Virus record (IMG/VR): IMGVR_UViG_3300030503_000315
Location: 124,001 to 188,000 of that record
Reading direction: 5' to 3' (one strand)
DNA: 64,000 nt
How positions within the stretch are numbered: the first letter of the stretch is position 1; each line of letters begins with the position of its first letter. The position numbers were made by a program, and so were the translations under genes. Shown here piece after piece: positions 8,543-40,051 of this stretch. The notes under the pieces are model-generated. The model saw only the letters and a program-made list of their open reading frames with translations. It made no database searches and was not told where the DNA came from.

Positions 8543-8729
8543 CCGAGCTTTCCTCCAGCTTTGATATGCTTAGAAAGTATTCAAACAGGATTGCCATTTC
8601 TGAACAATCTCTTCCCGAGAAGAAAGGTCTGCCTTCGTCAAGATAGACATAAGCTCGACGAAGGTCCACAATGTATTCCTGTACAATTTCTTTGAGTTCC
8701 CAAGGCTCCATCTCTGACGGATGCATCAT
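8532..8729 (-). CDS. Small protein sharing a module with the 14577-15815 protein
   Basis: DLRRAYVYLDEGRPFFSGRDCSEMA vs DLHRAHEYLDAGKPFFTGKDCSELA. Confidence 0.7.
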   Translation of the reverse strand: MMHPSEMEPWELKEIVQEYIVDLRRAYVYLDEGRPFFSGRDCSEMAILFEYFLSISKLEESSDER

Positions 8730-8731
8730 TT

Positions 8732-11823: not shown

Positions 11824-14620
11824 TTATTCCTTATCCACCAAAGCAACTAGATCTATGTCGGGTTTATTTACTTCATGCCAAACTGCTTTGAGGATCTCAC
11901 TGGAGACGGCGTCCGGATGGTTAGGGTGATGGTCTACACCGCTCAGGATATACGTGATATCGTTGTTTTCATGTGCTTCGAACCAAAGCTGAACCAGAGG
12001 ATTATCTTTTTCCCAAAGACCATAGTGATTGCGGATGTGCATACCAACCGAATGATGGAACTGTCCCATCTTTTCAGCAGTATCAACTTCTTCGCTTCGG
12101 AGGAATTTGATATCATCCTCTTTGAGGTTTGCTACGAGTTCCTTAATGATCTCTTCTTTACTTAGGTACGACATTGCTAGCTCCTTGTTGGTTATCATAC
12201 TTGAAATGCGTGTCCCGCCAATCTTCACAAACAGATTCTACGTGATGCGCGCCATCGATACCTATGTAAGTTAGGTCATGACCTTTGTAGCAATACTGTC
12301 CATCATCGTTGCATCCAGAAATTACAGCAGCTATAAGCAAGAGAGTTATCACAAACAAAGTAGGGGCCCACGCGGGATAAGTGTTCTTCATGTTCGCCTC
12401 TAGTTACAAGTTTGAGTAAGCTTATTTAGCGCCAGAGCTATGAGGATGTTCATTCTTCAACTTCATGCCATCCTTCTGCCGGAGTGTGTTCAATCATTAC
12501 TGGCTTGTGACCCAAAGCTATCAACTCTTCAGCCGTCATCTCATACCAAGGCTTGCTGTTAATCCCGGGAATGGGAAGAGGCGATGATTCGATTTTCATG
12601 TCCAAAGGATCGTAGATAGGATTACCTTTGATGTCATGATCTACGGGATTCATTTCTTCTCCAGTTCATCTCTTATGAGGTTGAGGGCTAGCCGCTCGTA
12701 ACTTCCTTCCTCGGTCATGTCTTCAAGGTACCGTAACGCGTCATCAACGGAAGTAAAGTCAGGCCGTTTGCTGTCAGATGTATCCACTGGGATGCTGTAT
12801 CGGTTTCGGAGGGGATACTTTTTGGGATCGCTCCAAGAAGTAGAGCCGCACTTACGACAAGACCAACAATGAGTGCCACTGCCGGTATAAGAATCCGAGT
12901 ATTCAAACCAATCATGTTTGTCCTCGTCGCACGGAATGACAGGCATGTTAGTGACCCATGTTCTCTAGTTTAGCTAAGGCAGCGAGTCTTTCTCTTTCCC
13001 ACTCATCCCTAGCCTTGGTGATTTCTTCAATGAAGATGTTAAGATTGTAGATGGACATGTGGTCACCCATCATGTCAAGGAAATTCTGTGTAAACTCTCG
13101 TGCATCTTTTGCTGAGATATCTATATCCTGTTCCGCAGCTTCCTCACTTCTCTGTAGACCGAACCCAGCTTCAGAGTGATGCTCATAGATGATGCGAAAA
13201 CGATTCCACGGGTTAAGATACAACGTTTGCTCAGGTTGGTCTGGGTTGCCCGGAAGCCACGTTCCCCAATCAGGATGTACCTCTTTATGATACTCAGCGT
13301 GCCTAGCCATCGACATTGCTGCGAGCTCAAGTTTGATCTTCATTTTGGAAACTCCTTAATTCTGCATTAACGTTCTCGATACTACCATACTTCTTCACAA
13401 TACGATCATGCTCAATCTTAACGAGTTCTCTACGATTCTTCCTCTCTTCGACGGAGAGATTAGGATAGAGATAACGATCCTCTGCAAGCCTCTGGTAATA
13501 GAGATAGATATGTTCGTATGGGTTTCTGATTTTGTATTGCCTAAGAGCCTCGTCGATTTCTTCATCCGATGGCTCGGGTATTTCCTGAACTACCTTCCTA
13601 CCACAGGTCTCGCAGGATGAGACCTTCACTCGGGAAAGTCCGACATCGGACGATTCAAATCCTCTGGATGAATCTGACGTTCTCTATCCAACTGTTCGAT
13701 GGATTTCTTCGCCAAACTTAATCCTTTCTTGATTCCTTCTACTATCACCTTACTGTCAACATCGGCAACAAGATCGTGGAGCTCAGAGTCAACAAATCTC
13801 GCTATGTCAGCATCTATATTTGTAGATGAGATATGAGATTGGTCAACGGGAGAGGATATGTCAACCACGTTTGGATCTTTATCAGCTGCGCATGTCACGG
13901 TAAAACTTTTGCCACACATAAAGTTCTGACACGTCGAGGCCCACGGTGCATTTCCTGTTCCACATACAGGACATTTCCATCCAGTCTGTACCGGTTGTGG
14001 TGCAGGTTCACATCCCTGGAATGGTGCGCACATCCCGGGCGTCGGACACTCAGACATAGTCTTTCTGCAGATCATCATATTCTTACCTCCTGGTGGTCTG
14101 GAGTATTCTAACTCCAAAAAGATACCATGTTGTTACCTGAGCGTATCCGTAGAACTCTCTCGGTCTACCTGGCAGTTCAACCTGGTTCCAGGTTTTGGAA
14201 ATCATCTGGACCTCACACGTAATCTTCGAAGTCAGGCGGAAAGAAAAGGACAGGATCGTCTTCCGGATCACCAGAAAATGGAATGCCTTGGAATTTCTTC
14301 GTAAAGAAACGCCCTTCCTTACCACAACGTTTGAGCAATTTCGTTTCCATCCAACTTGCCGAACGTTGGATGGAACATTCAGTTAGGTAGTCAGAGTGGT
14401 GTTCTCTGTATTTCGTCTTCCCATCTACAAGATCTATGTAGGAAGATTTCTCTATCCTTCTATGCTCCATGGTTACCGCGTACGCACAGGTATCCGGCTT
14501 CCGACCATGAACAGTCATTGCACCTTGTATATGATGGACGCAATCTTTGCACAACGGTATGTTGTTATTTACCATATCATTCTCCACAGAACCCGAAGGA
14601 ACGTTCGACCACAGAGTCAT
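11824..14620 (-). other. Cluster of ~9 small hypothetical genes, some with CxxC motifs
   Basis: Abutting ORFs 11824-~12174, 12158-12391 (lipoprotein-like ISGC), 12450-12653, 12650-12946, 12948-13343, 13327-13629, 13626-~14078, 14213-~14575. Confidence 0.6.
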
Positions 14621-15815
14621 CTACATGCTCGAAACGAGGGATCCACAGACCATCTCGCTTCACGTATTCCCGCCACTCTGAGACAGGACGCAACCAGTCC
14701 GAAAGTTTCGACACTGACTCGTAGTCAACGTAGGATACACCCGTAGCTTCCATCGTGCTGATCTTCGTCACACGATAGAACCCACCATTGTAGTGACGGT
14801 AGTATTCGTTGACCTCAGGCATGGGAGACAGTTCAGGAAACTTCGGCTGTTCCTTTTTAGAATCTAACCCGAGCAAAGATTCGAGGAACTCTGCAAGTTC
14901 GCTACAATCTTTGCCGGTGAAGAATGGTTTACCCGCATCAAGATACTCATGTGCGCGATGAAGATCGTTAATCCATTCGGTCGCATACTGTCTCTTTTCC
15001 TCCTCATCCGCCCACCACATGTTGCCCGGCGCATGTAGAAGGGGTTCTACGGCTAGACGTCTCTTCTCTACCTGTTCTTGAGTGTCGGCCAGCTGACATT
15101 GAAGCGAAAGATCCGACGCAGACTCACGAATCAGGCCATAGGTAGGGTCTGCATCTTCCAAAGGATCACCATAGACTACTTCCGGAAGAATCTCTTCAGG
15201 ATCGTCAATGCTCCAACTCTGCACTTCCTGCCACCAAGGCTTCTGCTCAATTCTTGTCCCCAATGTTTCTTCCAGGCTAGGATTAACTCCGAAAACAGGA
15301 ACCTCTTTTGTGTCTACAGGTTTCTCCTCTTGTTCTATCAGGAAATCTATCAGGAAATCTTTCTTTAGTCCAGACGCTGCCTGGTGTTTGTTGTCCAACC
15401 GAAACCACACCCCGGTAAATTTCCTATGTACATGAAAGTGTCCGACTGCAGGGGCAGGTACACTCAATGGTTTGGACTGTCTGCGAAACCCCGGAAATTC
15501 CATCTGAGCTAACTGACGAAATGCCGAGGCTTCACCTGATATCGTAGAGTCGTATGGCAGAACATGAAGGAGGATACATTCATTAAAAATTCCCTCAGTT
15601 TCCAGCTCACGTTTCAGGTGATTCATTGCCGCGTTGTAGGTGTTCCACAGGAACTGGTTGTAAGGATGAACGGGGTAGAAAATCAGGTAACCTTTCTGTG
15701 ATGGCAACCATCGTGGATCTGAACCTAGGACATCGTGGAGAATTCGAGCCTCATCCACCTGGTAAACCTTCTTCCAGATACGTCCTTCCCGACCTTCCTC
15801 AATCGTAAAATGCAT
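14577..15815 (-). CDS. Multidomain protein with C-terminal DUF1653-like domain
   Basis: True start MHFTIEEG at 15815 (GGAGGGAG SD); C-terminal YRHYNGGFYRV...VDYES...WLRP.SEW. Confidence 0.75.
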   Translation of the reverse strand: MHFTIEEGREGRIWKKVYQVDEARILHDVLGSDPRWLPSQKGYLIFYPVHPYNQFLWNTYNAAMNHLKRELETEGIFNECILLHVLPYDSTISGEASAFRQLAQMEFPGFRRQSKPLSVPAPAVGHFHVHRKFTGVWFRLDNKHQAASGLKKDFLIDFLIEQEEKPVDTKEVPVFGVNPSLEETLGTRIEQKPWWQEVQSWSIDDPEEILPEVVYGDPLEDADPTYGLIRESASDLSLQCQLADTQEQVEKRRLAVEPLLHAPGNMWWADEEEKRQYATEWINDLHRAHEYLDAGKPFFTGKDCSELAEFLESLLGLDSKKEQPKFPELSPMPEVNEYYRHYNGGFYRVTKISTMEATGVSYVDYESVSKLSDWLRPVSEWREYVKRDGLWIPRFEHVDDSVVERSFGFCGE

Positions 15816-15859
15816 AACTCCCTCCTCTGGTTGTTGACCTCCATATTTACTGTTTCTAG

Positions 15860-16073
15860 GTACTGTCAACATCCACTGTAAGTACTTCCTGTACCCCAGG
15901 ATATAACGTAACAATATACTATATGTGACAGTACCTAAATGTCGACAAGTACCCAAGAGTACTGTCAACATCCACTGTAAGTACCACCACCTACTTACAG
16001 TAACCACTGACAGTACATCCTCAAACGTAGGAAATGGTAAATATGAGGTACTTACAACAAATACTGACAGTAC
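15860..16073. repeat. Iteron-like direct and inverted repeats; candidate replication origin at strand switch
   Basis: 26 bp direct repeat GTACTGTCAACATCCACTGTAAGTAC at 15860-15885 and 15959-15984; inverted bipartite copies at 15992-16016 and 16048-16073; extra TGACAGTAC at 15926. Confidence 0.85.
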
Positions 16074-16104
16074 CAAAACGGAGTTTAAGTTGAACAGATA
16101 TGCA

Positions 16105-17430
16105 ATGTTGGATGGGGCAGCAATAGGTACCGAATATGACCCAGCATTAGACTCTGGTCGTGTGGTTTGCAAGAATCCAAAAGCCCTATGGAAAGCGATC
16201 GAGGAATCACGGGAAATCACAATCATAGCCAAGAAAGCTGATGAACTTGTTGCTCGAATGGATCCATGGGATAACGAGAGTGGTCGGGGTTGTCGTGATC
16301 TACCAATCAAACGAACGATCTACCTCGATCTAAAGATGAGTGCGGATAAGAAAGGTAAGAAAAGGTGGCATTTCAACATTCGTACGAATCCTGCGTCGGT
16401 CTTCACTGGGGATAACACATTTGGATCCTTGATGGTTGTTCGGCAAATCAGGGAAGTGTTCAACTTCATCCTGGATTACTTCGAGGACATGGGGGTAAAT
16501 GTCGAGGTGATGAGGAAGCAGGTACAACGAGGGGACATAGTTCTGTCTTCCATAGCATTTGCTGTCTACTCTGACAAGGTGAAAAACTCTGATATAGTTC
16601 GGCGACTGCTGGACAAGTGGTACTTCATGTACGAGACAAGGGTGGAGTACGAAGGACGGTATGTGACTCTGTTGGAAGCTCTTGGTTTGTCCAGGTCATC
16701 TGGGGAACAGTTCGCAGATTCCTTGGGGCTGAATATCTTTGGGTATAACCTGGCGGCAAAGGCGAAGTCGGCTACCGACAGAGGGCACAAGCTGATGCAC
16801 CTTTGCCTGTACGATAAGGCGGCAGAACTTCGTGCCAAGGACAACCTGGCGGATAATGATGATGAACTAGTGGATGATCTTGAACGCAGGATACGGTTTG
16901 ACCTGACGATCTCTCGCTATTACTTCAACACCGCATGGAACATGAAGCACGTAACATTGCGTAACCTCTACATGAAGATGAAGGAAAAGGGGTCGTGGGA
17001 AAATGTTGTGCTGGAACTAATGAACTATGCCATTGATCGTACCTGCCTGCAGTACATGGCGGTGGCTCCGAATGTCTATGCGGCGGAACATTCGGAGATA
17101 CTTGATCTGTGGACCAGGCAGATAGAGCAGAGGAAAGGTAGAGGGTCAGGGAAGTGGGACCCGAAGTTGATTCGATGGGCGGAAGAACTGGGCGTCAAGT
17201 TGAAGGTGAGTCCAATAGCACATCTGATAATGCACCAAGGTAGGCTTGGTCTGCATATGAATCGTATGGATAAGGCGAAGGAATGGTTGTCGTCACCCGA
17301 AGGCGCAAAGAAGTACGGCCTGTCGGTAACCAAGGCGGCGGAGCTTGAGCGTAAGCAGAGCAATTTCGCGAGAGCAGTGTCAAAGCTTGAGCTAGACTTC
17401 TCCAGTCCAACTTACGTGAGGTTAGGATGA
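16105..17430 (+). CDS. Gene II/X-family (Rep_trans-like) rolling-circle replication initiator-like protein
   Basis: Start trimmed to MLDG; TNPASVFTGDNTFGS resembles the NPxK..xGHNxFGS motif; LYDKAAE (catalytic YxK) and RIRFDL. Confidence 0.7.
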   Translation: MLDGAAIGTEYDPALDSGRVVCKNPKALWKAIEESREITIIAKKADELVARMDPWDNESGRGCRDLPIKRTIYLDLKMSADKKGKKRWHFNIRTNPASVFTGDNTFGSLMVVRQIREVFNFILDYFEDMGVNVEVMRKQVQRGDIVLSSIAFAVYSDKVKNSDIVRRLLDKWYFMYETRVEYEGRYVTLLEALGLSRSSGEQFADSLGLNIFGYNLAAKAKSATDRGHKLMHLCLYDKAAELRAKDNLADNDDELVDDLERRIRFDLTISRYYFNTAWNMKHVTLRNLYMKMKEKGSWENVVLELMNYAIDRTCLQYMAVAPNVYAAEHSEILDLWTRQIEQRKGRGSGKWDPKLIRWAEELGVKLKVSPIAHLIMHQGRLGLHMNRMDKAKEWLSSPEGAKKYGLSVTKAAELERKQSNFARAVSKLELDFSSPTYVRLG

Positions 17431-18131
17431 AGGACAATGAAAAATCTTACGTCTACATGTATCGGGTAGATGGCGTACCTATCTATGTTGGAATAGGGAC
17501 CGAAGATAATGGGAACTTTGTACGCGCGCGGAGTCTGGTAGGACATAAGGGTATTAAACCTGACGAATTCGATAAGGTTCAGATAGATGTGATCCAGCGT
17601 AACATTTCTAGAACACAAGCTAGAACATTTGAATCCGTACTTATCCAGGTTCTGGGTCAGGATTTCAGGTTAAGGAATAAGAAGATCTCAGACCGCAAAG
17701 TAAATGTTCGCACCATAGTGGCCGACCCAAATTCGAAAAAGAGAATTGTAAGAGGACAGGTTGCGGATGAGATGATTCGGAAAGAATTAGTCACAGAACA
17801 ATTACAACTATTCTCGAGCGACAGCGGACTAGCTTCTCATAATATATTTTTAGAACCTAGCAAGACTTCTTCGGGTAATTTGGTAGCAGCCTTGTGTACT
17901 GGGTATGATCCGGAATTGGATTCACTCTTGACAAAGTTTCATAAGTGGTGGAGATCCGTCGGGTTCGACCCGATGTATGAGAAAGTAATGATTATAGTAC
18001 CATGGGAATCTCAAGCCGAAAATTTTCGGAAAGCTACCAAAGATATTTGTTTCCATGGATCAGATAGGCCTGCGGTTCTGATTACTTCAGTTGAGCGTTG
18101 GGCAGAGTTTATGTTGGGGCACAAGAAGTGA
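17427..18131 (+). CDS. GIY-YIG nuclease-domain protein
   Basis: YVYMY...IYVGIG, downstream Arg, Glu (ARTFE) and Asn (LRN). Confidence 0.7.
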   Translation: MKDNEKSYVYMYRVDGVPIYVGIGTEDNGNFVRARSLVGHKGIKPDEFDKVQIDVIQRNISRTQARTFESVLIQVLGQDFRLRNKKISDRKVNVRTIVADPNSKKRIVRGQVADEMIRKELVTEQLQLFSSDSGLASHNIFLEPSKTSSGNLVAALCTGYDPELDSLLTKFHKWWRSVGFDPMYEKVMIIVPWESQAENFRKATKDICFHGSDRPAVLITSVERWAEFMLGHKK

Positions 18132-18180: not shown

Positions 18181-18558
18181 ATGACGATACTTTGCAGGAT
18201 ACGGAAGGACAAACAAAACAACTGGTGGGACCTTGATTCGGTTCTCATAAGTGTGGATGGCATCCTGGGCATGCCCTTCGCCCGCGGATTCAAAGATCAG
18301 TTTCATGCAGTGTCGTGGTTAAGTCATCATGTAACGAGATGCTTAGGCATCGATTGCTCACACCTGTTTAATGGATACTCCGTACCTTACGATGATCTGG
18401 ACGTTGAGGTATCATACACTTTTGGTGTAGCTTATCCAACGGTGAGTTTCCATGCGTTCAATATTAGCCTGTCAACCTTTGAAGTGATCTGTGACGAGTC
18501 ACAGACTAAGGAAGACCTGGATCTTCTACAACTCATGAAAGACATTTGTCAGGGATAA
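18181..18558 (+). CDS. DLLQLM-tag family protein 1
   Basis: Start trimmed to MTILCR (AGGAG SD); ends DLDLLQLMKDICQG. Confidence 0.75.
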   Translation: MTILCRIRKDKQNNWWDLDSVLISVDGILGMPFARGFKDQFHAVSWLSHHVTRCLGIDCSHLFNGYSVPYDDLDVEVSYTFGVAYPTVSFHAFNISLSTFEVICDESQTKEDLDLLQLMKDICQG

Positions 18559-18561
18559 CCA

Positions 18562-18948
18562 ATGAATCAATGTAGTGGATGCGTCTACCAGGCCAGAAAG
18601 CAGAATGACCTGTGGCATCTTTTCTATGAGATGTTATACACCGAAAAGTCATCTGGTCTTCGTCATCTTATGAGAGGTCAGTTCACAAGTAGGGATGAAG
18701 CTGAGCGTCATCTTGTTGAAACCTTTGGTCGTTGTACAGACCAACTCGAGGCCGACAGGGTGTCTTGTCTTGTCCTGCTTATTCCACGAGAACAGGAATG
18801 GGATCTTCAAGTGAAATGGGATCCAGTTCCTACCACCAGCATGTTGTGTTATCCAAATATTGCAAACCTAAAGTACAAGATCACCAAACATGCTGCACAA
18901 CCTGATCTTCTGCAACTCATGCACGATATCCTTGGAGATAACCAATGA
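18562..18948 (+). CDS. DLLQLM-tag family protein 2
   Basis: Ends PDLLQLMHDILGDNQ. Confidence 0.75.
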   Translation: MNQCSGCVYQARKQNDLWHLFYEMLYTEKSSGLRHLMRGQFTSRDEAERHLVETFGRCTDQLEADRVSCLVLLIPREQEWDLQVKWDPVPTTSMLCYPNIANLKYKITKHAAQPDLLQLMHDILGDNQ

Positions 18949-19307
18949 CGATCCTTGTTCATTTTCGAAAATCTACGAACCCGCAAAAGTGGAGCGTGAG
19001 TACAACTCTGGTGTCTCGTGATGGCATCCTCGGTATGCCCGAACGCGGTGCCTTCGCGACGCAAGCCGGAGCCTACGAGTGGCTTATAAGTGAGATAGCC
19101 GTGGCGACCAATTATGACGTAAAACAGGTTTTTGAAGAGGCACGTGCCGAGGTGCGTATCGATATCGAAGAGGAGTTCGACATCGTAATTTCTGTACCAA
19201 ACGGGCACAGTACCCTTCCTATAGTGGAGTTCAAAAGACTCAACATGGTGGGAGATGTAACCACCGTGGACCTCCTGCAGTTGATGAACGACATCTGCTC
19301 TAACTGA
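18945..19307 (+). CDS. DLLQLM-tag family protein 3
   Basis: Ends VDLLQLMNDICSN; shares DGILGMP with protein 1. Confidence 0.75.
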   Translation: MTILVHFRKSTNPQKWSVSTTLVSRDGILGMPERGAFATQAGAYEWLISEIAVATNYDVKQVFEEARAEVRIDIEEEFDIVISVPNGHSTLPIVEFKRLNMVGDVTTVDLLQLMNDICSN

Positions 19308-19315
19308 GGTATAGA

Positions 19316-19675
19316 ATGGCAATCAGAAAATGTGAGTGGAGTATAATGCGAGTAGGGAACATCGCTAGCTCTGGGACTTACTCGGGTTATGAAATCTATG
19401 ATGACGCTACACAGAAACTCTTAGATACAGCTCCTCGTGGATTTCTTTCGACGACTTTGCGCCGCTTGATGTTATGTATTGGATATCCTAGAGATCAGAT
19501 AGACGCCCTTGTGGATCCCTTGGTTGTTCAGTTGATGAAAGATGAAACAACACCTCTGTACCTTCACTTCGAAGCAGACCTTGAGATGTGCTGCCGACTT
19601 CTGGATGTACCTTACAAGGGTCCGGTGGTTCCCACTCCAGACCTCCTGCAAATCATGAATGATATCTGTTCCTAA
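19316..19675 (+). CDS. DLLQLM-tag family protein 4
   Basis: Ends PDLLQIMNDICS. Confidence 0.75.
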   Translation: MAIRKCEWSIMRVGNIASSGTYSGYEIYDDATQKLLDTAPRGFLSTTLRRLMLCIGYPRDQIDALVDPLVVQLMKDETTPLYLHFEADLEMCCRLLDVPYKGPVVPTPDLLQIMNDICS

Positions 19676-19685
19676 GGACTAGCAT

Positions 19686-20084
19686 ATGGATCTCATAGGA
19701 TGTATTTTTAAAGTTAGGATGTTACGAAACGCAGCCCATTGGGAAATTCTTAATCAGTACATCTATGAGGATGGATCTCTAACTCGAGAGACTTACTTTA
19801 GTTCGAGTTTAGGCTCAAGGTTACAGGCGGATTCATACCTCGCTGGACATGTCCGAAGCTGTTTTGACGACATTCGCTACTCCATGGCGCTCTCTACTAT
19901 AGATAGAGTAGGGAAAGATCTTGAGTACGACTTTATCCTGAACTGGGATCCTGTACCTCCCATCTTTCCAGGTGGTAATGCCGCATTGAAGAATCTGAGC
20001 ATGAGAGTTGAAGTTCCTGGTGATGATGGACAGCAAACAACACCTGATCTTTTATCCATCATGAATGATGTTTGTAGAGGATGA
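19686..20084 (+). CDS. DLLQLM-tag family protein 5
   Basis: Ends PDLLSIMNDVCRG; shares WDPVP with protein 2. Confidence 0.75.
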   Translation: MDLIGCIFKVRMLRNAAHWEILNQYIYEDGSLTRETYFSSSLGSRLQADSYLAGHVRSCFDDIRYSMALSTIDRVGKDLEYDFILNWDPVPPIFPGGNAALKNLSMRVEVPGDDGQQTTPDLLSIMNDVCRG

Positions 20085-20476
20085 AGATGAAATACGTTAC
20101 ATGCACGTTCAAGGTATTGAAGAACCCAGATGTATCTAGTGCGTCAAAGTGGGTAGTCAAGTACATGTACAAGCAGGAATTCGGTCTTGCTACAGTTCCG
20201 CAAACATTTGGTACTTATCTCACAAGAGGTGAGGCTATGGATAGTCTTGTCTATCATATAGGATCTGTCCTTGGTGATTTGTCGAACCACTACTATGATC
20301 TACCTCCGGATGTTGAATTCAGGATTGACATCAATTTCGACCCTATCGATCCGGACATTCATCCTCTGAATCATACTTCCCTCACAAATGTTCGACTAGA
20401 TCTAACGTGGAAAGATGACAAGAGCCTGGATGGTTCGGCCTTGCTTGATCTCATGTACGACATCTTGGGAAACTGA
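20081..20476 (+). CDS. DLLQLM-tag family protein 6
   Basis: Ends ALLDLMYDILGN. Confidence 0.75.
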   Translation: MKMKYVTCTFKVLKNPDVSSASKWVVKYMYKQEFGLATVPQTFGTYLTRGEAMDSLVYHIGSVLGDLSNHYYDLPPDVEFRIDINFDPIDPDIHPLNHTSLTNVRLDLTWKDDKSLDGSALLDLMYDILGN

Positions 20477-20477
20477 C

Positions 20478-20903
20478 ATGCTAGTGACCAATATGCAGTA
20501 TCTTGTTCAACCTAAGAAATCTGGTATCTGCGATTTTCATGTCGATGCCAAGTGGGTGGATACGAATGGAGTATCCCATCTGTATGATTCTTTCTATCCG
20601 ATTGACCGGGAAAACCTTTTGGTAACCCTTGCATGGTTGTCGCACCACAAGATCGGCAGCAACTGTGGGGCTTCCGATTACGCATGGCGTCAACTCTTTG
20701 ATAACTATGTGCAGCCCAAGGACAATTTCTATACACACGAGTGTTTGATAACCTTGGGTTGGGGTCTCAAAGCTTACGACGAATCGTCTGTCACTCCTAC
20801 CCATGTGCGTATCGATGAAGCTACGTGGACCAAAGTTGGTATCCATGGGGGAAGCTTAAGAACAAATCTCCTCGACCTGGCCAAAGATTTGTGTCAGTTC
20901 TAG
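20478..20903 (+). CDS. DLLQLM-tag family protein 7
   Basis: Start trimmed to MLVTN; ends NLLDLAKDLCQF. Confidence 0.7.
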   Translation: MLVTNMQYLVQPKKSGICDFHVDAKWVDTNGVSHLYDSFYPIDRENLLVTLAWLSHHKIGSNCGASDYAWRQLFDNYVQPKDNFYTHECLITLGWGLKAYDESSVTPTHVRIDEATWTKVGIHGGSLRTNLLDLAKDLCQF

Positions 20904-20933
20904 GAAAGTAAATATTGATGTCGATCTTAGGAG

Positions 20934-21314
20934 GTGCCCGCGGTGAAAGATAACTGTTTCAACATTTACTACAACTCAAGGCTTGATACTTGGGAACTGT
21001 ACGAGTCCAGCGGCCATGCAATCTTGGGTTGGAGCAGGTCTCAAGATCAGGTCGTGTGGTTTGCAAAGAATGCTGCTCAACGAAATAACGGTGGCGAACC
21101 CGTAGAGTTCGATATCGAACGCTATGGCGCCGTGGTTTATATGTCTCCCAAGCCCACCTCGGCTATTTGGCAAGAAATTGTAGACCGGGAAGATGCCGAG
21201 TGGAAGAGGAAGGTTGACGAGATGATAGCGGGTTATGTTCCTGGATCTCTACTGGATCCTACAAAGGTCTGGTCTACTGAGCCAGACCTTTTGCAGTTGA
21301 TGCATGATCTCTAA
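20934..21314 (+). CDS. DLLQLM-tag family protein 8
   Basis: Ends PDLLQLMHDL. Confidence 0.75.
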   Translation: MPAVKDNCFNIYYNSRLDTWELYESSGHAILGWSRSQDQVVWFAKNAAQRNNGGEPVEFDIERYGAVVYMSPKPTSAIWQEIVDREDAEWKRKVDEMIAGYVPGSLLDPTKVWSTEPDLLQLMHDL

Positions 21315-21322
21315 GGAGAACC

Positions 21323-21790
21323 ATGATGGTTTTGGAGAAGCTTGAATTTCGTTTCAATAGAAGTTGGATGGCGCCACACTCAATGTTGTTCATTGATAGT
21401 GGAGGAGGTCAAACTGTTTGGGCTACATTCGATGAAGATCAGATGGAAGCTACCCTCGACACCTTCATTCGCAACCGGTTTGCTGGACTAGACTTTGTCA
21501 AAGAAGCGTTTGATGACTGGTTAACCGATGCTGTCTCGGGTGGTCCTGAAATCTCAGATGAAGAGGCATGGAATTTTGATGTCTATTTTGGACCCCAGCA
21601 GATAGATGGTATGGATCCAAATTTCGATTCCAAGAAATTTGCCATAGCAGAGTGGGATCTTCCTGATGATGAAATAGAACAATTGAGTAGTGTTCGTGGT
21701 TGTACTTTCTCCAAAGACACCATCATCCAGTTTGTAGAAGTCACTTACGGGAGTAAAGTAGTTGATCTCCTTTCCTTAATCCCCTTTTAA
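21323..21790 (+). CDS. Tag family protein 9 (VDLLSLIPF variant)
   Basis: Ends VDLLSLIPF. Confidence 0.75.
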   Translation: MMVLEKLEFRFNRSWMAPHSMLFIDSGGGQTVWATFDEDQMEATLDTFIRNRFAGLDFVKEAFDDWLTDAVSGGPEISDEEAWNFDVYFGPQQIDGMDPNFDSKKFAIAEWDLPDDEIEQLSSVRGCTFSKDTIIQFVEVTYGSKVVDLLSLIPF

Positions 21791-21802
21791 GCTGAGACAT
21801 TT

Positions 21803-22438
21803 ATGGTCGCGTTATTCCTTACCGGGATGTCGTTTGTAGAATCTCTTCTCTTCATACCATTTGTGTTTTATGGTTTGGTGTTGGTTCTCGTTGTCCTATC
21901 TGCTTGGGCAATAGATGAATCACCAGGTAACAAACGTGAAGGTTGGTTTATTGCAACTTTGCTATCTGCGTTGCTTGTTCTACTTATTGGCTGGAAGTTT
22001 GGTGTTCATTTCTCGGGCCTGGTGAACCACCCGGTGTTCTCTATCGAAGCTTTTGTGGTATATCTTGTTGTAGGTGTGCTGTGGAGTTTTGGTAAGTGGT
22101 ATTTCTTTCTCTCTAAGGTCAGAGAGAAATACTTAGAACTCAAGGATGAATATTCATCTAGCTTACAAAGCCTTTATCATGCTGTGGATTCAGAGTTGAA
22201 TTTCTACAAGAGAGTTGACTATAATTCTTTGGATAAAAATCCAAATCAAATCTCTGAAGCGATCAAACCCCAGGTATCGGCGCATAAAGCGAGTATCACC
22301 CGTTGGATCATTTGTTGGCCTTTGAGTTTCGTGTGGACTATGCTTAATGATCCACTGCGCAAACTTGCCGATACAATCTTCTCGCATATCAAAAGTGTAT
22401 TCCAGAAGATGTCTGATAAGATGTTCCATGGAGTATGA
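21803..22438 (+). CDS. Multi-pass membrane protein
   Basis: Three N-terminal TM segments plus a C-terminal hydrophobic stretch. Confidence 0.75.
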   Translation: MVALFLTGMSFVESLLFIPFVFYGLVLVLVVLSAWAIDESPGNKREGWFIATLLSALLVLLIGWKFGVHFSGLVNHPVFSIEAFVVYLVVGVLWSFGKWYFFLSKVREKYLELKDEYSSSLQSLYHAVDSELNFYKRVDYNSLDKNPNQISEAIKPQVSAHKASITRWIICWPLSFVWTMLNDPLRKLADTIFSHIKSVFQKMSDKMFHGV

Positions 22439-22439
22439 G

Positions 22440-22796
22440 ATGGCAATTTCTGACAGATACAAGTTTGTGATGTTTAGGACAGATATTGGTTTTCAGGTGG
22501 ATAAATTTCTAGGATTCAATGATCTTAGCTACGAGAGTGAACCTGTATCCAAAACCTATAGTTCATTTGTCCTGGCATGCGATTCAATCCTGCTTATTAT
22601 TCGTCCGTTCTTGCCGGACACCATGAAGCCAGTTCCAACTTGTATGAAGGGGCTGGATTCATCCAGGAATCATGAGTTCATTGTAATTTATGATACTTTT
22701 AATATAGTTGCTGTCGGTGCCCGATGTTTCAAGGAACATCCATATAACCCAAACCTAATCGAGGAAGTTGATCTGCTTTCTCTCATTCCATTCTAA
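22440..22796 (+). CDS. Tag family protein 10 (VDLLSLIPF variant)
   Basis: Start trimmed to MAISDRY; ends VDLLSLIPF. Confidence 0.7.
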   Translation: MAISDRYKFVMFRTDIGFQVDKFLGFNDLSYESEPVSKTYSSFVLACDSILLIIRPFLPDTMKPVPTCMKGLDSSRNHEFIVIYDTFNIVAVGARCFKEHPYNPNLIEEVDLLSLIPF

Positions 22797-22805
22797 GGAT
22801 AAGAT

Positions 22806-23909
22806 ATGAGTACTCAAGATGTTCAAGACGTTGACTTCAAGGAAGTAACGGAATCAAAGATGATCGATAGCACCAAACAGGAAGTAAAACCAAAGCATCG
22901 AATCCTTCATGTTCAGGTGCAGGGCAATCCCAGTTCGGAAGACTTGTTGAGCACCGCTCAGGCGTTTGAGAAGGCTCTACAATCTGGATCGTCCTCAGTG
23001 GTATCCACGACCCCGAACGTTCAGACGTTCCACATCTATGGCGAAGGTGAAGCTCCGTTCAATGGTGTTCTGGTTCGTGGGGCTATTACCCTCGAAGACA
23101 TCGCAAGGACAATCCATGATGCGGAGATGGCGTACAGCAAGCAAGGCTTCAAATATTGGTTCGATCTTGCGGATGATCGACGCCGCGAGTACGTCAAGTT
23201 GGTTAAGAATGAGCTGCGTGGTATCACAACTACGTCTGACGACCAGGTGAAGAATCAGCTTGTCTATAACATCGTTACCGCATTGAAGTCTTGCCTCCCT
23301 GCTCCGCAACTTACCAACCTTATCCAGGCTAAGGTGTGGAATGGTTCTCAGGATTATGAGAGCGACGATGCTTGGACGACGATCGGGTTCCCTGATCTGA
23401 AGAAGGGTCATGTGTGGATCAACCCTGAAGAATCTCCTGTGGTGTATCGTCACTGCCAGTCTGATTCATATGTCAACTACGATGGTGGAACATCGTTCGT
23501 TACCGTAGATGTACTGGAAGTCGTTCCTTGTACTGGAACCATTGAGGACAAGATCGTTCTTCAATGGAAGCCCAAGGCGTTGATCGAGCACGAAGTTCGT
23601 GAAGCTTTTTCGAAGTCCGAAGAAAGTGCGGACGCTGAATTGCTAGCCCAAGCTAACGAAGCACGCGATGAAGGCTTTGCACCGGATGAAGAAGTACAGG
23701 CACTACAAGATTCATTAGTTTTGTCTGATGAAGATTCCAAACCTGCGGGTGAAGAAGTTCTCAAGCCCTTCAGTGACACTAGCGATGCAGTGGATCAACC
23801 ACAAACTGCTGTTGATACGAATGGTGTAGAACACAAGGTGAATCCTGTTACCGACACCTGGCAGAAAGAATTGAACGTTCAAGGAGAGCAGGATGCGTCT
23901 TCAGTGTAA
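22806..23909 (+). CDS. Hypothetical protein, acidic C-terminus
   Basis: 367 aa ORF. Confidence 0.8.
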   Translation: MSTQDVQDVDFKEVTESKMIDSTKQEVKPKHRILHVQVQGNPSSEDLLSTAQAFEKALQSGSSSVVSTTPNVQTFHIYGEGEAPFNGVLVRGAITLEDIARTIHDAEMAYSKQGFKYWFDLADDRRREYVKLVKNELRGITTTSDDQVKNQLVYNIVTALKSCLPAPQLTNLIQAKVWNGSQDYESDDAWTTIGFPDLKKGHVWINPEESPVVYRHCQSDSYVNYDGGTSFVTVDVLEVVPCTGTIEDKIVLQWKPKALIEHEVREAFSKSEESADAELLAQANEARDEGFAPDEEVQALQDSLVLSDEDSKPAGEEVLKPFSDTSDAVDQPQTAVDTNGVEHKVNPVTDTWQKELNVQGEQDASSV

Positions 23910-25966
23910 AGTCACTTCCTGGAAGGTAGCGGAGTTCGGTGCAGTATCTGGAAACCATTTCCTCCTCGAATTCCAGGCTACCCATCTCGAATGGAAAACC
24001 GTAGTCGTTCCTTTTCCCTCTTCTCCTTCTTCGGCGTTTGAAGAGATGAGGAAGATGTATGAAAAGCACGTCCACACCTCGATGGCTATCCCAGGTCATC
24101 TTCTGACAACCGAAGGAGAAACGCGTGGATTACATTAACAATGCAATAACGTTGGAAGAAATGCAAGTTGAGTATGGTATCCTTCATTCCGATTTGGGAG
24201 AGACGGATCTGTGCGAAATGGTCACCGCAAGGCTGAATGAAGGTTGGGAGCTGCAAGGTGGCGTAGCTTTGATGAGTTTTATGTTACCGCCATCCACTAT
24301 TCCAACGATTCGCTATGCGCAGGCAATCGTTCGTTATGTGCCGTTACCGAAGGAAGATCAACCAGAGCAAATTGAAGCGTAAGAAAACTTAAGGAGTAGT
24401 ATAGCATGCAGAAAAGAATCAAGGTTAGTTCCTTTAACAACACAGTCAAAACTGTTGTAGCAGGCGAGACCGAACGTGAAGTTAAGGTGGGGTGGAAAAA
24501 GATAGATCAGAGTCAGATTTTATTCACTGGAGCACCCACTCTTGGTCGTGTTACGGTTGGGCAGGGCCTTAGCTTCGACAGCACTTACGGTGTGATCGGA
24601 ATCCAAGACAATACTAGTATCACCTCAGCACCTGTTATCTGCAAGGAATATGTTGAGAAAGAAGCGTTCGATCAGTTGAAGATGCAGTGCGACCTCATGA
24701 TGGGACAAATCTCAATGCTTGAAATGGCGCGCCAGCGCTTCGAGATGCTGGAGAGTATATCTGGTGGTTCGTATGTGCTTCAGGAAAAGATCAATAAGAT
24801 CCGTAACCTGGAAACTGAACTACTGAATACTCAACGCAAACTTGAGTGGGACGGCAACAGTGTGATTAATCAACTTCGGGAGGTTCGCGGTGACCAATAT
24901 CGACAAATCTACTAGGCCGAAGGTCAAGGTCACTTCTGTCAATCAGGAAAAGGTTAACAAAGCTTGTGGTGAGATGGTAGATTTCCTTTCGAAGTCTATC
25001 GAATCTTACCTGTCATCCCTACTTGGTTTTTCGGAAGATGAGTTTACAAGGTCGTTAGCTCTCAACATGCTAGCACCTTCGTCTCGGGAACTTGTGGTCG
25101 GTAGTCCTGTTGTCGGGAAAACCTTGGTTGATAATAATCTTAAAGCCATAAACTATTTGACCTACGGTAACCAACTGTGGGTTCAACGTGTGAATCCTGC
25201 GTTCCCGGGCGACATTAACAGCTTTGAACACCAACTGGTTGGTGACGTCATTGAAGACGAAGATTGTGCCAAGGACGAATCTTTCGCCCTGAAACCATAG
25301 GGGTGGGGATGAGTAAGAGAAAGCAGAAGGTACTTCCTCCGGGCATAGTTGCTCAGTCTCAGAAGAACAAATGCCTGGACGGAACTTTCATCGACCACAA
25401 GAAGTACATGAAGTTGTATCGTCACCACACCATGCGGATTATCCGTGACGTTCGCAAGGGCGTGGTGAACGAGGTTGATATGGACAAGCTACAGAACTTC
25501 ATCCAGTTTTCTCTCGCTCTGATGGATCGTGCTAATATGGAGGACATAGACAAGGCATGGCGTAATGCTGAAGCCATGTCCTTCATCCACGCGGACATGG
25601 GAATCGAGATTGTGGAGACCGTGGATGAACGGGAAAACTACGAGGGGATCCTCGACCCAGTGGTTCAAGCGACGGCAACGCAAGAAGGAAAACCAGATGG
25701 CAAACCCTCCCAACCCATTACCACCGAGTAAACAGAATCTGTTGCCGGATTACGCGGTCATCTCCATCGCAAACAAACACTCCGCTGCGTCCCTGTCCGA
25801 CCCATCAAAACCCTCGATCTACACCGAACAGTTCATTGCTGCTATAACAGAAGCTTTGATCGAGGCGGAGATACGCTCAGAAATTCTGATGCAGAATGCT
25901 ACGGCAAGATTTATTTGCGTGTGCGGGCAAAAAGGTCCGCATTCCTGTCAGTACATCAAAACTTAG
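23893..25966 (+). other. Six small hypothetical genes; three begin with the VKV(T/S)S motif
   Basis: ORFs 23893-24138, 24125-24382, 24406-24915, 24890-25300, ~25309-25731, ~25697-25966. Confidence 0.65.
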
Positions 25967-25974
25967 GAACCAAC

Positions 25975-26529
25975 ATGACCCAAGAAATCCCCGCGCACGT
26001 TCAGCGTATGCAAGCTGAATTCTTCGAACTGACGGGCAGGATAGAAAAACTTCTAGACTTCATCCGCAACAATCCTATCTTCCACACCCTCGACGAGGAA
26101 GAGCAAACCGACATGGAATTGCAATGTCACTACATGCAACTGTATAGTTTTCGACTTGAGTCGAGAATTGATCGCGCCAGGTTCAATCTGATAGACGGAA
26201 CAGAGACGGACGATGAGGACGCGAATGAGATCATCGAAAGCTGGGAAAAACCTGTTCCGGATTCCAGGATGCCTGAGTCGTTTGTCTTCGGAGACAACAC
26301 GAAGAACATCGCCAAGATAGTTACTCCAGAGACCATGAAGGCTGCGATGCGCCTGGATGAGATGCAGGAAATGAAACATCCTGACAAAGCTATACCAGAC
26401 TCGTTCAAGATCATAGATGATGGTGAAGTAGCTGGTCATGTTGCCTTAAAAGTAAGTGATCCTACAAAGCTGTGGCCATTTCCTACTGGTTCTCGTGGGT
26501 TTATCGGGAAATCCAAGGATAGTAAATAG
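25975..26529 (+). CDS. crAss001_48-like domain protein
   Basis: PAHVQRMQAE..EL..RI.KL..F.....F..L...EQ..M..Q...M..Y...L..RI pattern. Confidence 0.65.
   Translation: MTQEIPAHVQRMQAEFFELTGRIEKLLDFIRNNPIFHTLDEEEQTDMELQCHYMQLYSFRLESRIDRARFNLIDGTETDDEDANEIIESWEKPVPDSRMPESFVFGDNTKNIAKIVTPETMKAAMRLDEMQEMKHPDKAIPDSFKIIDDGEVAGHVALKVSDPTKLWPFPTGSRGFIGKSKDSK
26521..26528 (+). promoter_or_regulatory. Phage promoter motif (A/G/T)GTAAATA, representative of ~18 copies
   Basis: Minus: 2579, 7523, 11865, 15844; plus: 16036, 18142, 20907, 26521, 26722, 29477, 35548, 38183, 41539, 45057, 45722, 48241, 54501, 61017; these copies lie on the coding strand upstream of gene starts. Confidence 0.75.
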
Positions 26530-28791: not shown

Positions 28792-28864
28792 GATTGTAGT
28801 TGCACCGGGTAGTTCCCCTGTAGTACCGTGTGAAGTGTAGTACGTAGTCTTGTAAGTTGTGAAG

Positions 28865-28900
28865 GGGGCAGCCTGTTTAAGTTAGGCTGCCCTTTTCCTT
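28865..28900 (+). terminator. Intrinsic terminator
   Basis: GGGCAGCCT/AGGCTGCCC stem followed by T tract. Confidence 0.8.
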
Positions 28901-28928
28901 TTTGTTTTCGAATTTCATAGGTACCACC

Positions 28929-29489
28929 ATGGAAACAATTGATAAGATTTTCAATTGGATGAATCAAGACGGGGCAAGATTCGGAGTAGGAATGTGGATC
29001 ATAGGTGTAGCGTTTGGTCTCTTCCTGTCCTTGATTATCAAGTGGGTCAATCCATGAGTGTTCTTCGCAAAGAAATCTCTCGTCTGAACCATGTTATTGA
29101 GCGCACCGAGCAAGAGATGATTAATCTAGAGGAAGATTTCTGGCAGAATGGTGGCATCTGTTGTCCGGGTTGTGGTGTACCTGGATTCTCAGAGATGGAA
29201 GAGAAGCAAGAGCGTAGGAAAAAGCAACTTAGATATCTTATCAAGAAGTACGAGAAGGACAGTGGGAGGAAATATGAAGATCATCCGGAAGCTCGTAGCC
29301 TGGCCAGCCGCATATTCAATTTTCTTCTTGGGCTTGATCCTGACTAGGTTGGGTTGGTACAAAGGTCAGTGGCATTGGTTTATGGACTTAGCGATGCATA
29401 TCAGGATTGGGGTGGTTGCCCGGGTCCATGGCTTCGCACAGAAGATGTTCATAATGCACGAAAGAACAGGTGATGTAGTAAATATTTGA
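28929..29489 (+). other. Three small genes inserted between prkA and yeaH
   Basis: 28929-29057 (42 aa membrane peptide), 29054-29347 (CCPGC motif), ~29272-29489. Confidence 0.55.
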
Positions 29490-29539
29490 TGGGCGGTATA
29501 AAACCGGGTGACGGGTAGATCGTCACCTCAACTGGAGGG

Positions 29540-30817: not shown

Positions 30818-30823
30818 GGAGAA

Positions 30824-38596: not shown

Positions 38597-38965
38597 ATGC
38601 CCATTATCGCACTGTATGACAACGTAATTATTCGTCGGATAGAATCCCCGAACACGACTGCGTCTGGTCTTATCATTTCTTCTACGTCATCCCCGGATCA
38701 ATGGACAGGTGAAGTAGTTGCAACTGGTGAAGGAAAGATCCTTCAGGACGGATGTTTGTTCCCTCTAACCGTCAAAGAAGGTGATAAGGTTATCATCAGC
38801 ACTAAGTCAGAGTACCGTGCTCCTATATCGGTCGACGGTGAAGAACTTTACGCGTTCAAGGAACATGAACTAGTTGGTATCATCTATCCATATGGAACGG
38901 AATTGAATAATAGTTTCGGGATCGATGAAGAACTGGAAGACGAAGGGGAAGAGGAGGAAGAATGA
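38597..38965 (+). CDS. groES: GroES/Cpn10 co-chaperonin
   Basis: LYDNVIIRR...TASGLII...GEVVATGEG...PLTVKEGDKV. Confidence 0.85.
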   Translation: MPIIALYDNVIIRRIESPNTTASGLIISSTSSPDQWTGEVVATGEGKILQDGCLFPLTVKEGDKVIISTKSEYRAPISVDGEELYAFKEHELVGIIYPYGTELNNSFGIDEELEDEGEEEEE

Positions 38966-39187
38966 CTACTACACAGGTAGTTTGTGATCTGCTAGAAATT
39001 CGTCGATCGCTGTTTATGTGGAAGATGAACCTGGCAGCTGTGGATCGTTTGCTTCGTCACGTCGACTACGATACGACTACACTAGAGCAATACGACTTCA
39101 GCAAAGTCAACTACGAAGGCCAATCTGCGGGTTATCAGCGGGTAATCAAAGTTGACTTACTTGCTTTGTTGACCAAGTAAGTAGTAA

Positions 39188-39263: not shown

Positions 39264-40051
39264 ACGAAGGATTGCTATGCCTTGGATACAAGAACCCTAC
39301 GCTCCTCCTGCAACACAGAAAGTCATATTCAACACCTACGATATAGATCAAGCGAACGTTTGGATGAGAATAATCCAGATGCATATCTGTGATGAGAAGT
39401 TAAGGAATAAGCCAGGAACTTTCGAGTTCGGACATATAACGTTGCACGACGTCATCCTTGTCTCATGCTGTACGGATCAGGAACCTTCTTATTTGGTTTC
39501 CAGATCTCCCAAGACAGAGATTGAACTCGCGTTCATCCACTTCCCGGAAGAAAAGAAGGTTGAGAAGACAAACTTGCTGAGGTTGATCCATGAACCACGA
39601 TAGACATCCTGTTCTTGTTTGGATCGGTGCCTACGCGGTTTGCGTGGTCTTTGCCATAGTAATGATATTCATTCTTGCGGTCATCCGTGGAGATTTTCCT
39701 TTTAAGGATAGGAGGCAGATGAGTATTCTTGCAGGATTTGTATTCACGCCGGGTTTGAATGTTCTGTACGGTATAGCTTGCATCCCATATATGTTCCTGG
39801 CCTTTGACAAGAAGATCAAATCATGATCCCGGTAGAAATTCGATGGAACCATCGAAGGAATATAAACGGTTTGATCTGGGATGGGGAAATTCATACTCTA
39901 CCACTTATCGACCATTTCATCTCAATTGAAGATGATGGTATAACTAAGAGGTATATAGTAGTTGATGTTGAGCATCAGTTGAAGCATGTAGCATTGCACG
40001 AAGAACAGAACGTTTACATTTTTGTCAAATCTCATCCTTAGTAAAACCAAT

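What the first reader, a model, noticed from the sequence alone, without database searches (positions are those of the whole stretch)
18181..22796. Tandem array of ten divergent genes sharing a C-terminal DLL(Q/S)LMxDI tag
Seen: ten of eleven consecutive ~120-155 aa ORFs end in DLLQLMKDICQG, DLLQLMHDILG, DLLQLMNDICSN, DLLQIMNDICS, DLLSIMNDVCRG, ALLDLMYDILGN, NLLDLAKDLCQF, DLLQLMHDL and VDLLSLIPF (x2), while their bodies are barely alignable. Codons vary synonymously (GATCTTCTACAACTCATG vs GACCTCCTGCAGTTGATG), so the conservation is at peptide level. The only membrane protein in the array lacks the tag. Similar endings occur elsewhere (38962-39180 VDLLALLTK; 39277-39603 NLLRLIHEPR). Inference: a variable-domain plus constant docking helix design, e.g. 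interchangeable adaptors that recruit diverse host targets to one hub (protease, chaperone, or the phage PrkA/YeaH AAA+ system) or a capsid-loading/export signal.
Basis: partly seen in the sequence, partly recalled or inferred. Interest (0 to 1): 0.8.

Follow-up and report, generated by a model that had tools for sequence, protein, structure and literature searches.

The report
Phage gene array sharing one C-terminal peptide
Ten neighbouring small genes of an uncultured giant phage from peat have diverged almost beyond recognition, yet all keep the same short C-terminal peptide, which most likely attaches them all to one still unknown partner.

Summary
Ten of eleven consecutive + strand genes (18181-22796) end in [V/P]-D-L-L-x-L-[M/I/A]. 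Eight continue x-D-[I/V/L]-[C/L] (type 1). Two end P-F-COOH (type 2). In the six-frame translation of all 64 kb, the ten best motif matches are these ten tails. Synonymous codons are scrambled, so selection acts on the peptide.

The window is part of a ~245 kb peat metagenome phage. Two related phages carry the same array, giving 28 tails in all. Tagged proteins are 24-38% identical between phages, their tails nearly invariant, and untagged neighbours 42-59%.

Genes g01-g07 are full-length paralogues, and g11 shares their N-terminal module. Only g08 and g09 show no detectable body similarity.

No known family, solved structure or viral model matches. An exhaustive search of 1.8 billion proteins found four relatives.

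Best reading (confidence ~0.5): a fast-evolving family of small acidic proteins, each tethered by a variable linker to a constant amphipathic acidic helix that docks to one shared partner. The partner is unidentified. The embedded membrane protein is a weak candidate, and nothing links the array to PrkA. This is a new variant of the "variable body, constant address peptide" design. Interest is moderate.

The parts
18181..18558 (+). g01, 125 aa, class A body, type 1 tail DLLQLMKDICQG
   Evidence: AlphaFold model: four strands, two helices, two strands, a low-confidence linker, then a C-terminal helix at residues 115-123.
18562..18948 (+). g02, 128 aa, class A, tail DLLQLMHDILGDNQ
   Evidence: full-length match to g05, 6e-11.
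18945..19307 (+). g03, 120 aa, class A, tail DLLQLMNDICSN
   Evidence: g01-g03 29% identity over 123 aa, 1e-14.
19316..19675 (+). g04, 119 aa, most divergent class A member, tail DLLQIMNDICS
   Evidence: matches the family profile over its full length, 3.9e-23.
19686..20084 (+). g05, 132 aa, class A, tail DLLSIMNDVCRG
20081..20476 (+). g06, 129-131 aa (start at 20081 or 20087), class A, tail ALLDLMYDILGN
20478..20903 (+). g07, 141 aa (start corrected from 20415), class A, tail NLLDLAKDLCQF
   Evidence: Orthologue r3 in L011.
20934..21314 (+). g08, 123-126 aa, class B body with no significant similarity to class A, tail DLLQLMHDL-COOH
   Evidence: (orthologue r4, 29% identity, tail DLLYLMQDL).
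21323..21790 (+). g09, 155 aa, very acidic (pI 4.05), class C body, type 2 tail VDLLSLIPF-COOH
   Evidence: AlphaFold model is poor (pLDDT 53) and leaves the tail unstructured (pLDDT 33-37).
21803..22438 (+). g10, 211 aa, basic membrane protein without the tail, embedded between the two type 2 genes in all three phage lineages
   Evidence: It is 59-66% identical to the L011 orthologue. Homologues also occur in distant phages that have no tailed genes nearby.
22440..22796 (+). g11, 118 aa (start corrected from 22347), class D body whose N-terminal ~57 residues are homologous to class A, type 2 tail VDLLSLIPF-COOH
38962..39180 (+). Possible extra member: 72 aa protein ending VDLLALLTK
   Evidence: It fits only the loose pattern and scores below 10 bits with the tail matrix. 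No relatives were available to test conservation.
39277..39603 (+). Possible extra member: 108 aa protein ending NLLRLIHEPR
   Evidence: A weak match, in the gene adjacent to the previous one.

Best explanation
The array encodes a lineage-specific, fast-evolving family of small, acidic, soluble proteins (118-155 aa) that expands by tandem duplication. Each protein has three parts: a compact body, a linker of variable length, and a constant C-terminal peptide. The body starts with three or four strands followed by a long helix.

The peptide core, [V/P]-D-L-L-x-L-[M/I/A], is the start of a short amphipathic helix. It has a hydrophobic face (L2, L3, L5, M6, I9, C/L10) and conserved acidic residues (D1, D8).

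I propose that this peptide is a docking motif that folds onto a groove of one shared, slowly evolving partner. The bodies are then free to diverge, presumably to engage different targets. The two tail flavours (type 1, ...LMxDIC; type 2, ...LIPF-COOH) would bind the same partner in two ways, or two related sites.

Shown here: the motif, its position, peptide-level selection, its conservation across three phage lineages, its presence on at least three body types with no detectable similarity to each other, and the variable low-confidence linker.

Inferred: that it docks in trans, that there is a single partner, and that the bodies carry different specificities. The partner is unknown. It could be a host hub or a conserved phage protein; g10 is only a weak candidate.
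For: 1. Every strong motif match in the 64 kb lies 2-8 residues from the stop of an array gene.
2. Synonymous sites are randomised (28% identical codons).
3. Across the 28 tails, L2 is kept in 28 of 28, L3 in 26 of 28, and position 5 is L in 25 and I in 3. D8 is kept in 21 of 21 type 1 tails. The tails come from the window, L011, L029 and two fragments.
4. Between phages, tagged orthologues are 24-38% identical, while untagged g10 is 42-59% and g12 51-56%.
5. Within class A, the bodies average 16% identity and the tails 61%.
6. g09 and g11 carry the identical VDLLSLIPF in the window and in L011. L029 keeps VDLLSLIPF on its g11 orthologue, while its two g09-type genes end VDLLALIPIL and VDLLSLIPIL. 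The g09 and g11 bodies are unrelated at profile level (C vs D z = 0.1), and their tail codons differ at 6 of 8 positions.
7. The linkers differ in length, are rich in P, T, G and S, and are poorly modelled. In g01 residues 107-110 have pLDDT below 50. In g09 the whole tail has pLDDT 33-37.
8. Copy number differs between lineages: 10 tagged genes in the window, 6 in L011 and 10 in L029. This is typical of families under diversifying pressure.
Against: - No partner was identified and no binding could be tested, because co-folding of two chains is not available here.
- Most bodies are homologous: class A and class D share an N-terminal module. The tail could therefore simply be the best-kept helix of one fold, or an oligomerisation helix.
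- In the g01 model the tail is a helix of moderate confidence (pLDDT 67-69). Without coordinates I cannot tell whether it packs on the body.
- Only three phage lineages are known, all uncultured, with no expression data.
- g10 homologues occur in four more distant phage lineages without tailed neighbours.
Confidence: 0.5

Rival explanations
1. The tail is an integral structural helix, or a homo- or hetero-oligomerisation helix, of a single very divergent protein family. Its conservation would reflect packing within the family (in cis, or between paralogues), not an external hub.
For: - g01-g07 are full-length paralogues.
- g11 shares the N-terminal module (z = 5.9).
- The low-confidence g09 model has the same N-terminal order of strands and helix.
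- AlphaFold draws the g01 tail as a helix with pLDDT 67-69.
- Distant relatives found by the exhaustive search match over their full length and carry the same tail.
Against: - A helix packed on a core that has drifted to 16% identity would be expected to co-vary with that core. Instead it is nearly invariant.
- The identical 9-residue tail sits on the g09 and g11 bodies, which show no detectable similarity.
- Linker length and composition vary and the linker is modelled as disordered.
- The conserved positions include the likely solvent-facing acidic residues D1 and D8.
Confidence: 0.27
2. The tail is a sorting signal that loads the proteins into the phage head, so that they are injected with the DNA. 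This would resemble the capsid targeting sequence shared by the otherwise highly diverse internal proteins of T-even phages, but placed at the C-terminus.
For: - The design is the same: highly diverse small proteins that share only a short terminal peptide. PMC3012670 describes T-even internal proteins this way.
- The bodies evolve fast and copy number varies, as expected for anti-defence cargo.
- From general knowledge: giant phages package paralogous families of ejection proteins, and encapsulin cargo uses C-terminal loading peptides.
Against: - The peptide is C-terminal, not N-terminal.
- No conserved protease cleavage motif precedes it; the linkers share no pattern.
- The array follows the replication-initiator gene at the start of a transcription unit that contains replication and nucleotide-metabolism genes. 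No structural genes lie within the 64 kb.
- A membrane protein is embedded in the array.
- No virion data exist.
Confidence: 0.12
3. The tail is a degradation tag or protease-adaptor tether. It would give these proteins a short, timed life, or deliver their bound targets to a host AAA+ protease, in the way the C-terminal ClpX-binding peptide of SspB does.
For: - The architecture (body, flexible linker, short C-terminal peptide) is that of tethering adaptors such as SspB (general knowledge).
- Type 2 tails end in a fixed hydrophobic C-terminus: IPF-COOH in 5 cases and IPIL-COOH in 2.
Against: - Type 1 tails are followed by 0-5 variable residues. The free C-terminus is therefore not part of the conserved signal, unlike ssrA-type tags.
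- The sequence matches no known degron or ClpX-binding motif, as far as I know.
- Nothing was tested here.
Confidence: 0.08
4. The conservation is imposed at the nucleotide level. The gene ends might serve as ribosome-binding or coupling signals for the next gene, or might be homogenised by gene conversion.
For: - Genes are 1-13 bases apart or overlap.
- The last two or three codons after the motif are G-rich and look like Shine-Dalgarno sequences for the next gene, for example AGGGATAACCAATG and GGAGATAACCAATG.
Against: - The core motif lies 20-35 bases upstream of the next start.
- Its codons are used almost at random: 28% identical codons for identical residues.
- g11's tail is followed after 9 bases by g12, a gene of a different kind, and is still conserved.
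- The strict DNA pattern finds only this phage.
Confidence: 0.02

Closest known systems
Internal proteins of T-even phages with their capsid targeting sequence
   Same: A set of highly diverse small phage proteins that share only a short conserved terminal peptide, which addresses them all to one assembly (PMC3012670). The loci evolve fast and vary between related phages.
   Different: - The T4 signal is N-terminal, binds the scaffolding core, and is cut off by the head protease.
- Here the peptide is C-terminal, has an unrelated sequence, and has no conserved cleavage motif before it.
- No evidence of packaging exists.
- Most bodies here are still recognisably paralogous.
C-terminal tip of bacterial single-stranded-DNA-binding protein (SSB), which ends ...DDDIPF
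   Same: A short acidic and hydrophobic C-terminal peptide on a flexible linker that docks to partner proteins (PMC7913777). Type 2 tails end in the same three residues, IPF-COOH.
   Different: - Only one acidic residue precedes the IPF.
- Two of seven type 2 tails end IPIL.
- The bodies give no hit to any Pfam domain, so no DNA-binding domain was recognised.
- Type 1 tails do not resemble the SSB tip at all.
- Mimicry of SSB is a lead only and was not tested.
Clamp-binding tails of T4 gp43, gp33 and gp55, and bacterial clamp-binding motifs (QL[SD]LF)
   Same: Unrelated proteins share a C-terminal hydrophobic and acidic tail that docks to one ring-shaped hub (general knowledge).
   Different: - The consensus is not met: Gln is present in only 11 of 28 tails and its spacing to the hydrophobic residues differs.
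- No clamp gene was seen among the window proteins I scanned.
SspB-type tethering adaptors and poxvirus ankyrin proteins with a C-terminal F-box-like (PRANC) motif
   Same: A target-binding body plus a C-terminal peptide or helix that tethers it to a shared machine. The poxvirus genes also form fast-evolving multigene families (general knowledge).
   Different: There is no sequence or fold relation. These are analogies of design only.

Membership tests
Any curated protein family (Pfam, PHROGs, PADLOC) | A significant profile match | tested here: not met
   All ten tagged proteins were scanned against Pfam and PHROGs. No hit reached a curated cut-off, and the best E-value was 0.007. Six of them, plus g10 and g12, gave no PADLOC hit.
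T4-type internal proteins (capsid targeting sequence) | A conserved targeting peptide at the N-terminus | tested here: not met
   The conserved peptide is at the C-terminus. The N-termini are not conserved across classes.
T4-type internal proteins (capsid targeting sequence) | A head-protease cleavage motif next to the targeting peptide | tested here: not met
   The 12 residues before the tail share no motif.
T4-type internal proteins (capsid targeting sequence) | Presence inside virions | not testable with these tools
   The phage is uncultured and there are no proteomic data.
SSB C-terminal tip mimic | A C-terminus of the form D-D-D-[I/L]-P-F-COOH | tested here: inconclusive
   Five type 2 tails end LIPF-COOH and two end LIPIL. 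Only one Asp is present, five residues upstream. Type 1 tails do not fit.
Sliding-clamp-binding motif | QL[SD]LF or QLxLx[LF] | tested here: not met
   Position 4 is Q in 11 of 28 tails. The following residues, L-M-x-D-I, do not fit the motif.
Membrane-targeting amphipathic helix (MinD or FtsA type) | An amphipathic C-terminal helix with a basic face | tested here: not met
   The tail has conserved Asp at positions 1 and 8 and no conserved basic residue. The proteins have pI 4.0-5.9.
ssrA-like C-terminal degradation tags | Conserved residues at the very C-terminus with a free carboxylate | tested here: not met
   Type 1 tails are followed by 0-5 variable residues. Type 2 tails do have a fixed end, so this cannot be excluded for them.
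HicB / DUF1902-like small alpha-beta domains (my own early lead for the body) | Structural similarity of the body to solved members | tested here: not met
   Foldseek of the g01 model against the PDB gave a best E-value of 0.03 and TM-score 0.40, to unrelated folds. A PDB sequence profile search found nothing.

The most novel reading that the evidence does not exclude
The C-terminal peptide is a portable address label of a previously unknown phage sorting or recruitment pathway. An expandable set of fast-evolving effector domains, possibly anti-defence proteins, would be delivered through one constant docking helix to a single conserved machine. That machine could be the phage head for injection, a membrane complex built around g10, or a host hub such as the partners of SSB. 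This would be a bacteriophage counterpart of the T4 capsid targeting sequence or the poxvirus F-box-like adaptors, using a new signal.
Probability: 0.2. Interest if true: 0.85.

Novelty: new variant of a known kind. Interest (0 to 1): 0.5.

Why it matters
Short terminal peptides that address many different proteins to one machine are powerful handles. The T4 capsid targeting sequence became a tool for packaging foreign proteins into virions. SSB and clamp tails define whole interaction networks.

This array offers a clean, natural experiment. There are 28 proteins from three phage lineages whose bodies have drifted to 16-38% identity while a 6-10 residue peptide stays fixed. If the partner can be found, it would reveal how a giant soil phage organises a large, rapidly evolving set of small proteins. 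It would also give a transferable tag.

If instead the tail is just the last helix of one fold, the array is an ordinary expanded gene family with no known relatives.

Tried and rejected
1. Nucleotide and protein searches of the phage collection with the array region and with g05 found no relatives.

2. Word-based homologue searches with the family alignment and with g09 returned only the window's own proteins.

3. The search for related loci with g12 and with g10 in the viral collection found only the same phage. The metagenome scan added one spurious or fragmentary hit, L019. The family alignment was too divergent for that tool.

4. Degenerate DNA patterns for both tail types were scanned. 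They found only this phage in the viral collection. The type 1 pattern found nothing in 596 Gb of cellular genomes. The type 2 pattern found three chance, out-of-frame stubs there. No host protein carrying the tail was found, so there is no evidence for mimicry of a host tail.

5. Foldseek of the g01 model against the PDB and against viral models found nothing significant. The protein atlas search for g09 gave nothing usable.

6. Class A phylogeny, intended to date the duplications: the tree is saturated and unresolved except for orthologue pairs. I make no claim about the order of duplications.

7. Promoter and terminator scans were at background level.

8. No RNA runs were listed. Contigs of four other peat samples are identical to the window, so population variation cannot be used.

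9. The idea that g10 is the dedicated hub is weakened by four distant lineages with g10 homologues but no tails nearby.

10. The idea that a PDZ-type peptidase encoded in the window reads the hydrophobic C-termini is dropped. The 'peptidase' at 55791-56858 has no Pfam domain.


Full report
**What is there**

The window is part of an uncultured giant phage. Identical copies of the array lie on contigs of up to 245,653 bp from many peat metagenomes.

The window also encodes:
- a PrkA / DUF444 / SpoVR trio at 26851-32347;
- a family A DNA polymerase, a primase and an exonuclease;
- nucleotide-modification genes.

Genes switch from the - strand to the + strand near 16 kb, where GC skew also changes sign. 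The first + strand gene resembles filamentous-phage replication initiators (Phage_CRI). A 234 aa gene follows, and then the array.

**The observation**

Eleven tightly packed + strand genes occupy 18181-22796, and independent gene callers agree. g10 (21803-22438) is a basic membrane protein and lacks the tail.

The motif is far beyond chance.
- A regular expression for the core occurs 11 times in the six-frame translation of the window. Every occurrence is on the + strand within 2-8 residues of a stop, and ten are the array tails.
- A scoring matrix ranks the ten tails first at 15-21 bits. The next hits, at 14.8 bits or below, are unrelated.
- Codons for identical residues are the same only 28% of the time, close to the expectation from codon usage.

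The constraint is therefore on the peptide, not on the DNA. Recent gene conversion is excluded. The G-rich residues after the motif probably double as ribosome-binding sites for the next gene (my reading).

**Relatives**

No curated family matches. An exhaustive profile search of 1.84 billion representative proteins found 13 hits. Eight are the window's own proteins. One, a 3483 aa protein with no matched stretch, looks spurious. The other four are full-length relatives with the same tail.

Their contigs, and those of g10 homologues, reveal two further phage lineages with the same synteny: initiator, array, membrane protein, one more tailed gene, then g12 and PrkA.
- L011 has six tailed genes.
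- L029 has ten.
- A 745 bp fragment, L010, shows two family genes in tandem.

Together these give 28 tails.

| Position | Residues among 28 tails |
|---|---|
| -1 | V 12, P 7 |
| 1 | D 22, N 3 |
| 2 | L 28 |
| 3 | L 26 |
| 5 | L 25, I 3 |
| 6 | M 16, I 7, A 5 |

After position 6 there are two flavours. Twenty-one tails continue x-D-[I/L/V], usually followed by C, L or V and 0-5 further residues (type 1). Seven end P-F or P-I-L at the C-terminus (type 2).

Between phages, tagged orthologues are 24-38% identical. Untagged g10 is 42-59% and g12 is 51-56%. Within class A, bodies average 16% identity and tails 61%.

**Are the bodies unrelated?**

Mostly not. g01-g07 give significant full-length BLAST matches to each other and to relatives.

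I removed the tails and compared class profiles, using column-shuffled controls.
- Class A and class D (g11) are related over their first ~57 residues: score 23.1 against a null of 9.1 ± 2.4, E = 1.3e-3 (one search agrees).
- Class B (g08) and class C (g09) show no significant similarity to A, to D, or to each other.

The AlphaFold model of g01 (12-sequence alignment, pLDDT 74) has four strands, a long helix, a short helix and two strands. A linker with pLDDT below 50 follows, and then a helix at residues 115-123 that is the tail.

The g09 model is poor (pLDDT 53). It begins with three strands and a long helix in the same order, and it leaves the tail unstructured at pLDDT 33-37.

Neither the PDB nor a library of viral models contains a convincing match.

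The array is thus one rapidly diverging family plus two classes that are either unrelated or beyond detection. In all of them the tail is the only strongly conserved element.

**How it most likely works**

All ten tagged proteins are acidic (pI 4.0-5.9) and lack transmembrane segments. The tail has the pattern of a short amphipathic helix with a broad hydrophobic face and two conserved Asp residues. It hangs on a linker that varies in length and composition.

The key argument for docking in trans is that g09 and g11 carry the identical nine residues VDLLSLIPF in the window and in L011. L029 keeps them on its g11 orthologue, and its two g09-type genes end VDLLALIPIL and VDLLSLIPIL. Yet the two bodies have no detectable similarity, and their tail codons differ. 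A helix packed on two different cores would be expected to co-vary with those cores.

I therefore favour a shared external partner, with confidence of about 0.5. The main rival, at about 0.27, is an integral or oligomerisation helix of one fold. I cannot exclude it because the tools return no coordinates and cannot fold two chains together.

**Who is the partner?**

This remains unknown. g10 is embedded between the two type 2 genes in all three lineages and evolves more slowly than they do, which fits a hub. However, g10 homologues at 32-39% identity occur in four other giant-phage lineages with no tailed gene within 8 kb. g10 is therefore not a dedicated receptor.

Nothing links the array to PrkA beyond lying about 4 kb upstream of it. 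The strict tail patterns are absent from 185,579 species' genomes, apart from chance stubs. No host protein with this tail was found.

The IPF-COOH ending of type 2 tails recalls the SSB tip, but only weakly.

**Comparison and verdict**

[quoted passage not shown] SSB tips, clamp-binding tails and tethering adaptors such as SspB are further analogies. None of these families' defining features is met, so this is an analogy of design and not membership.

The family and the motif are new. The motif string appears in no paper in the searchable library. I rate it as a new variant of a known kind, of moderate interest. The pattern is clean and testable, but it comes from uncultured phages with an unknown host and no functional data.

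Noticed in passing
window 38597-38965: A phage-encoded GroES-like co-chaperonin (Cpn10, E = 1.2e-17) with a poly-acidic C-terminus. It is immediately followed by the two small genes whose ends weakly resemble the tail.
   Followed up: partly
window 26851-32347: A complete PrkA, DUF444 (YeaH-like) and SpoVR (YcgB-like) trio in a phage. The same trio is present in the related phages L011, L027, L028 and L029. The closest phage-collection matches are huge uncultured phages and Ralstonia phage RsoM2USA, at 52-57% identity.
   Followed up: partly
window ~14500-17430: Divergent transcription units meet here and GC skew changes sign. The first + strand gene (15925-17430, true start probably later) resembles filamentous-phage replication initiators (Phage_CRI). 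This may mark the replication origin region.
   Followed up: no
window 17427-18131: A 234 aa gene between the initiator and the array. It has no counterpart in L011, and L029 has a 173 aa gene at this position. No family match. The L029 protein ends ...AELKDILGIDD, faintly like the second half of a type 1 tail.
   Followed up: no
window 32556-33107, 61047-61529, 62863-63729: A dATP/dGTP pyrophosphohydrolase domain, a QueD-like synthase and a DUF5591 protein. Together they suggest that the phage modifies its DNA bases, for example through a 7-deazaguanine pathway.
   Followed up: no
L027, L028, L030 (around 8001-8800 in each): In distant giant phages the g10-like membrane protein sits in a conserved block with SIR2, SprT-like, NUDIX, NMN adenylyltransferase, NAMPT, thioredoxin and NAD kinase genes. 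This block is an NAD salvage island.
   Followed up: no
window 22806-23909: g12, a 367 aa very acidic protein (charge about -31) directly after the array. It is conserved at 51-56% identity in both related phages and matches phrog_5154 (unknown function).
   Followed up: partly
window 25975-26529 and 24125-24382: A crAss001_48-related domain protein and a DUF1737 protein lie between the array and PrkA. Both are conserved in synteny in L011.
   Followed up: no
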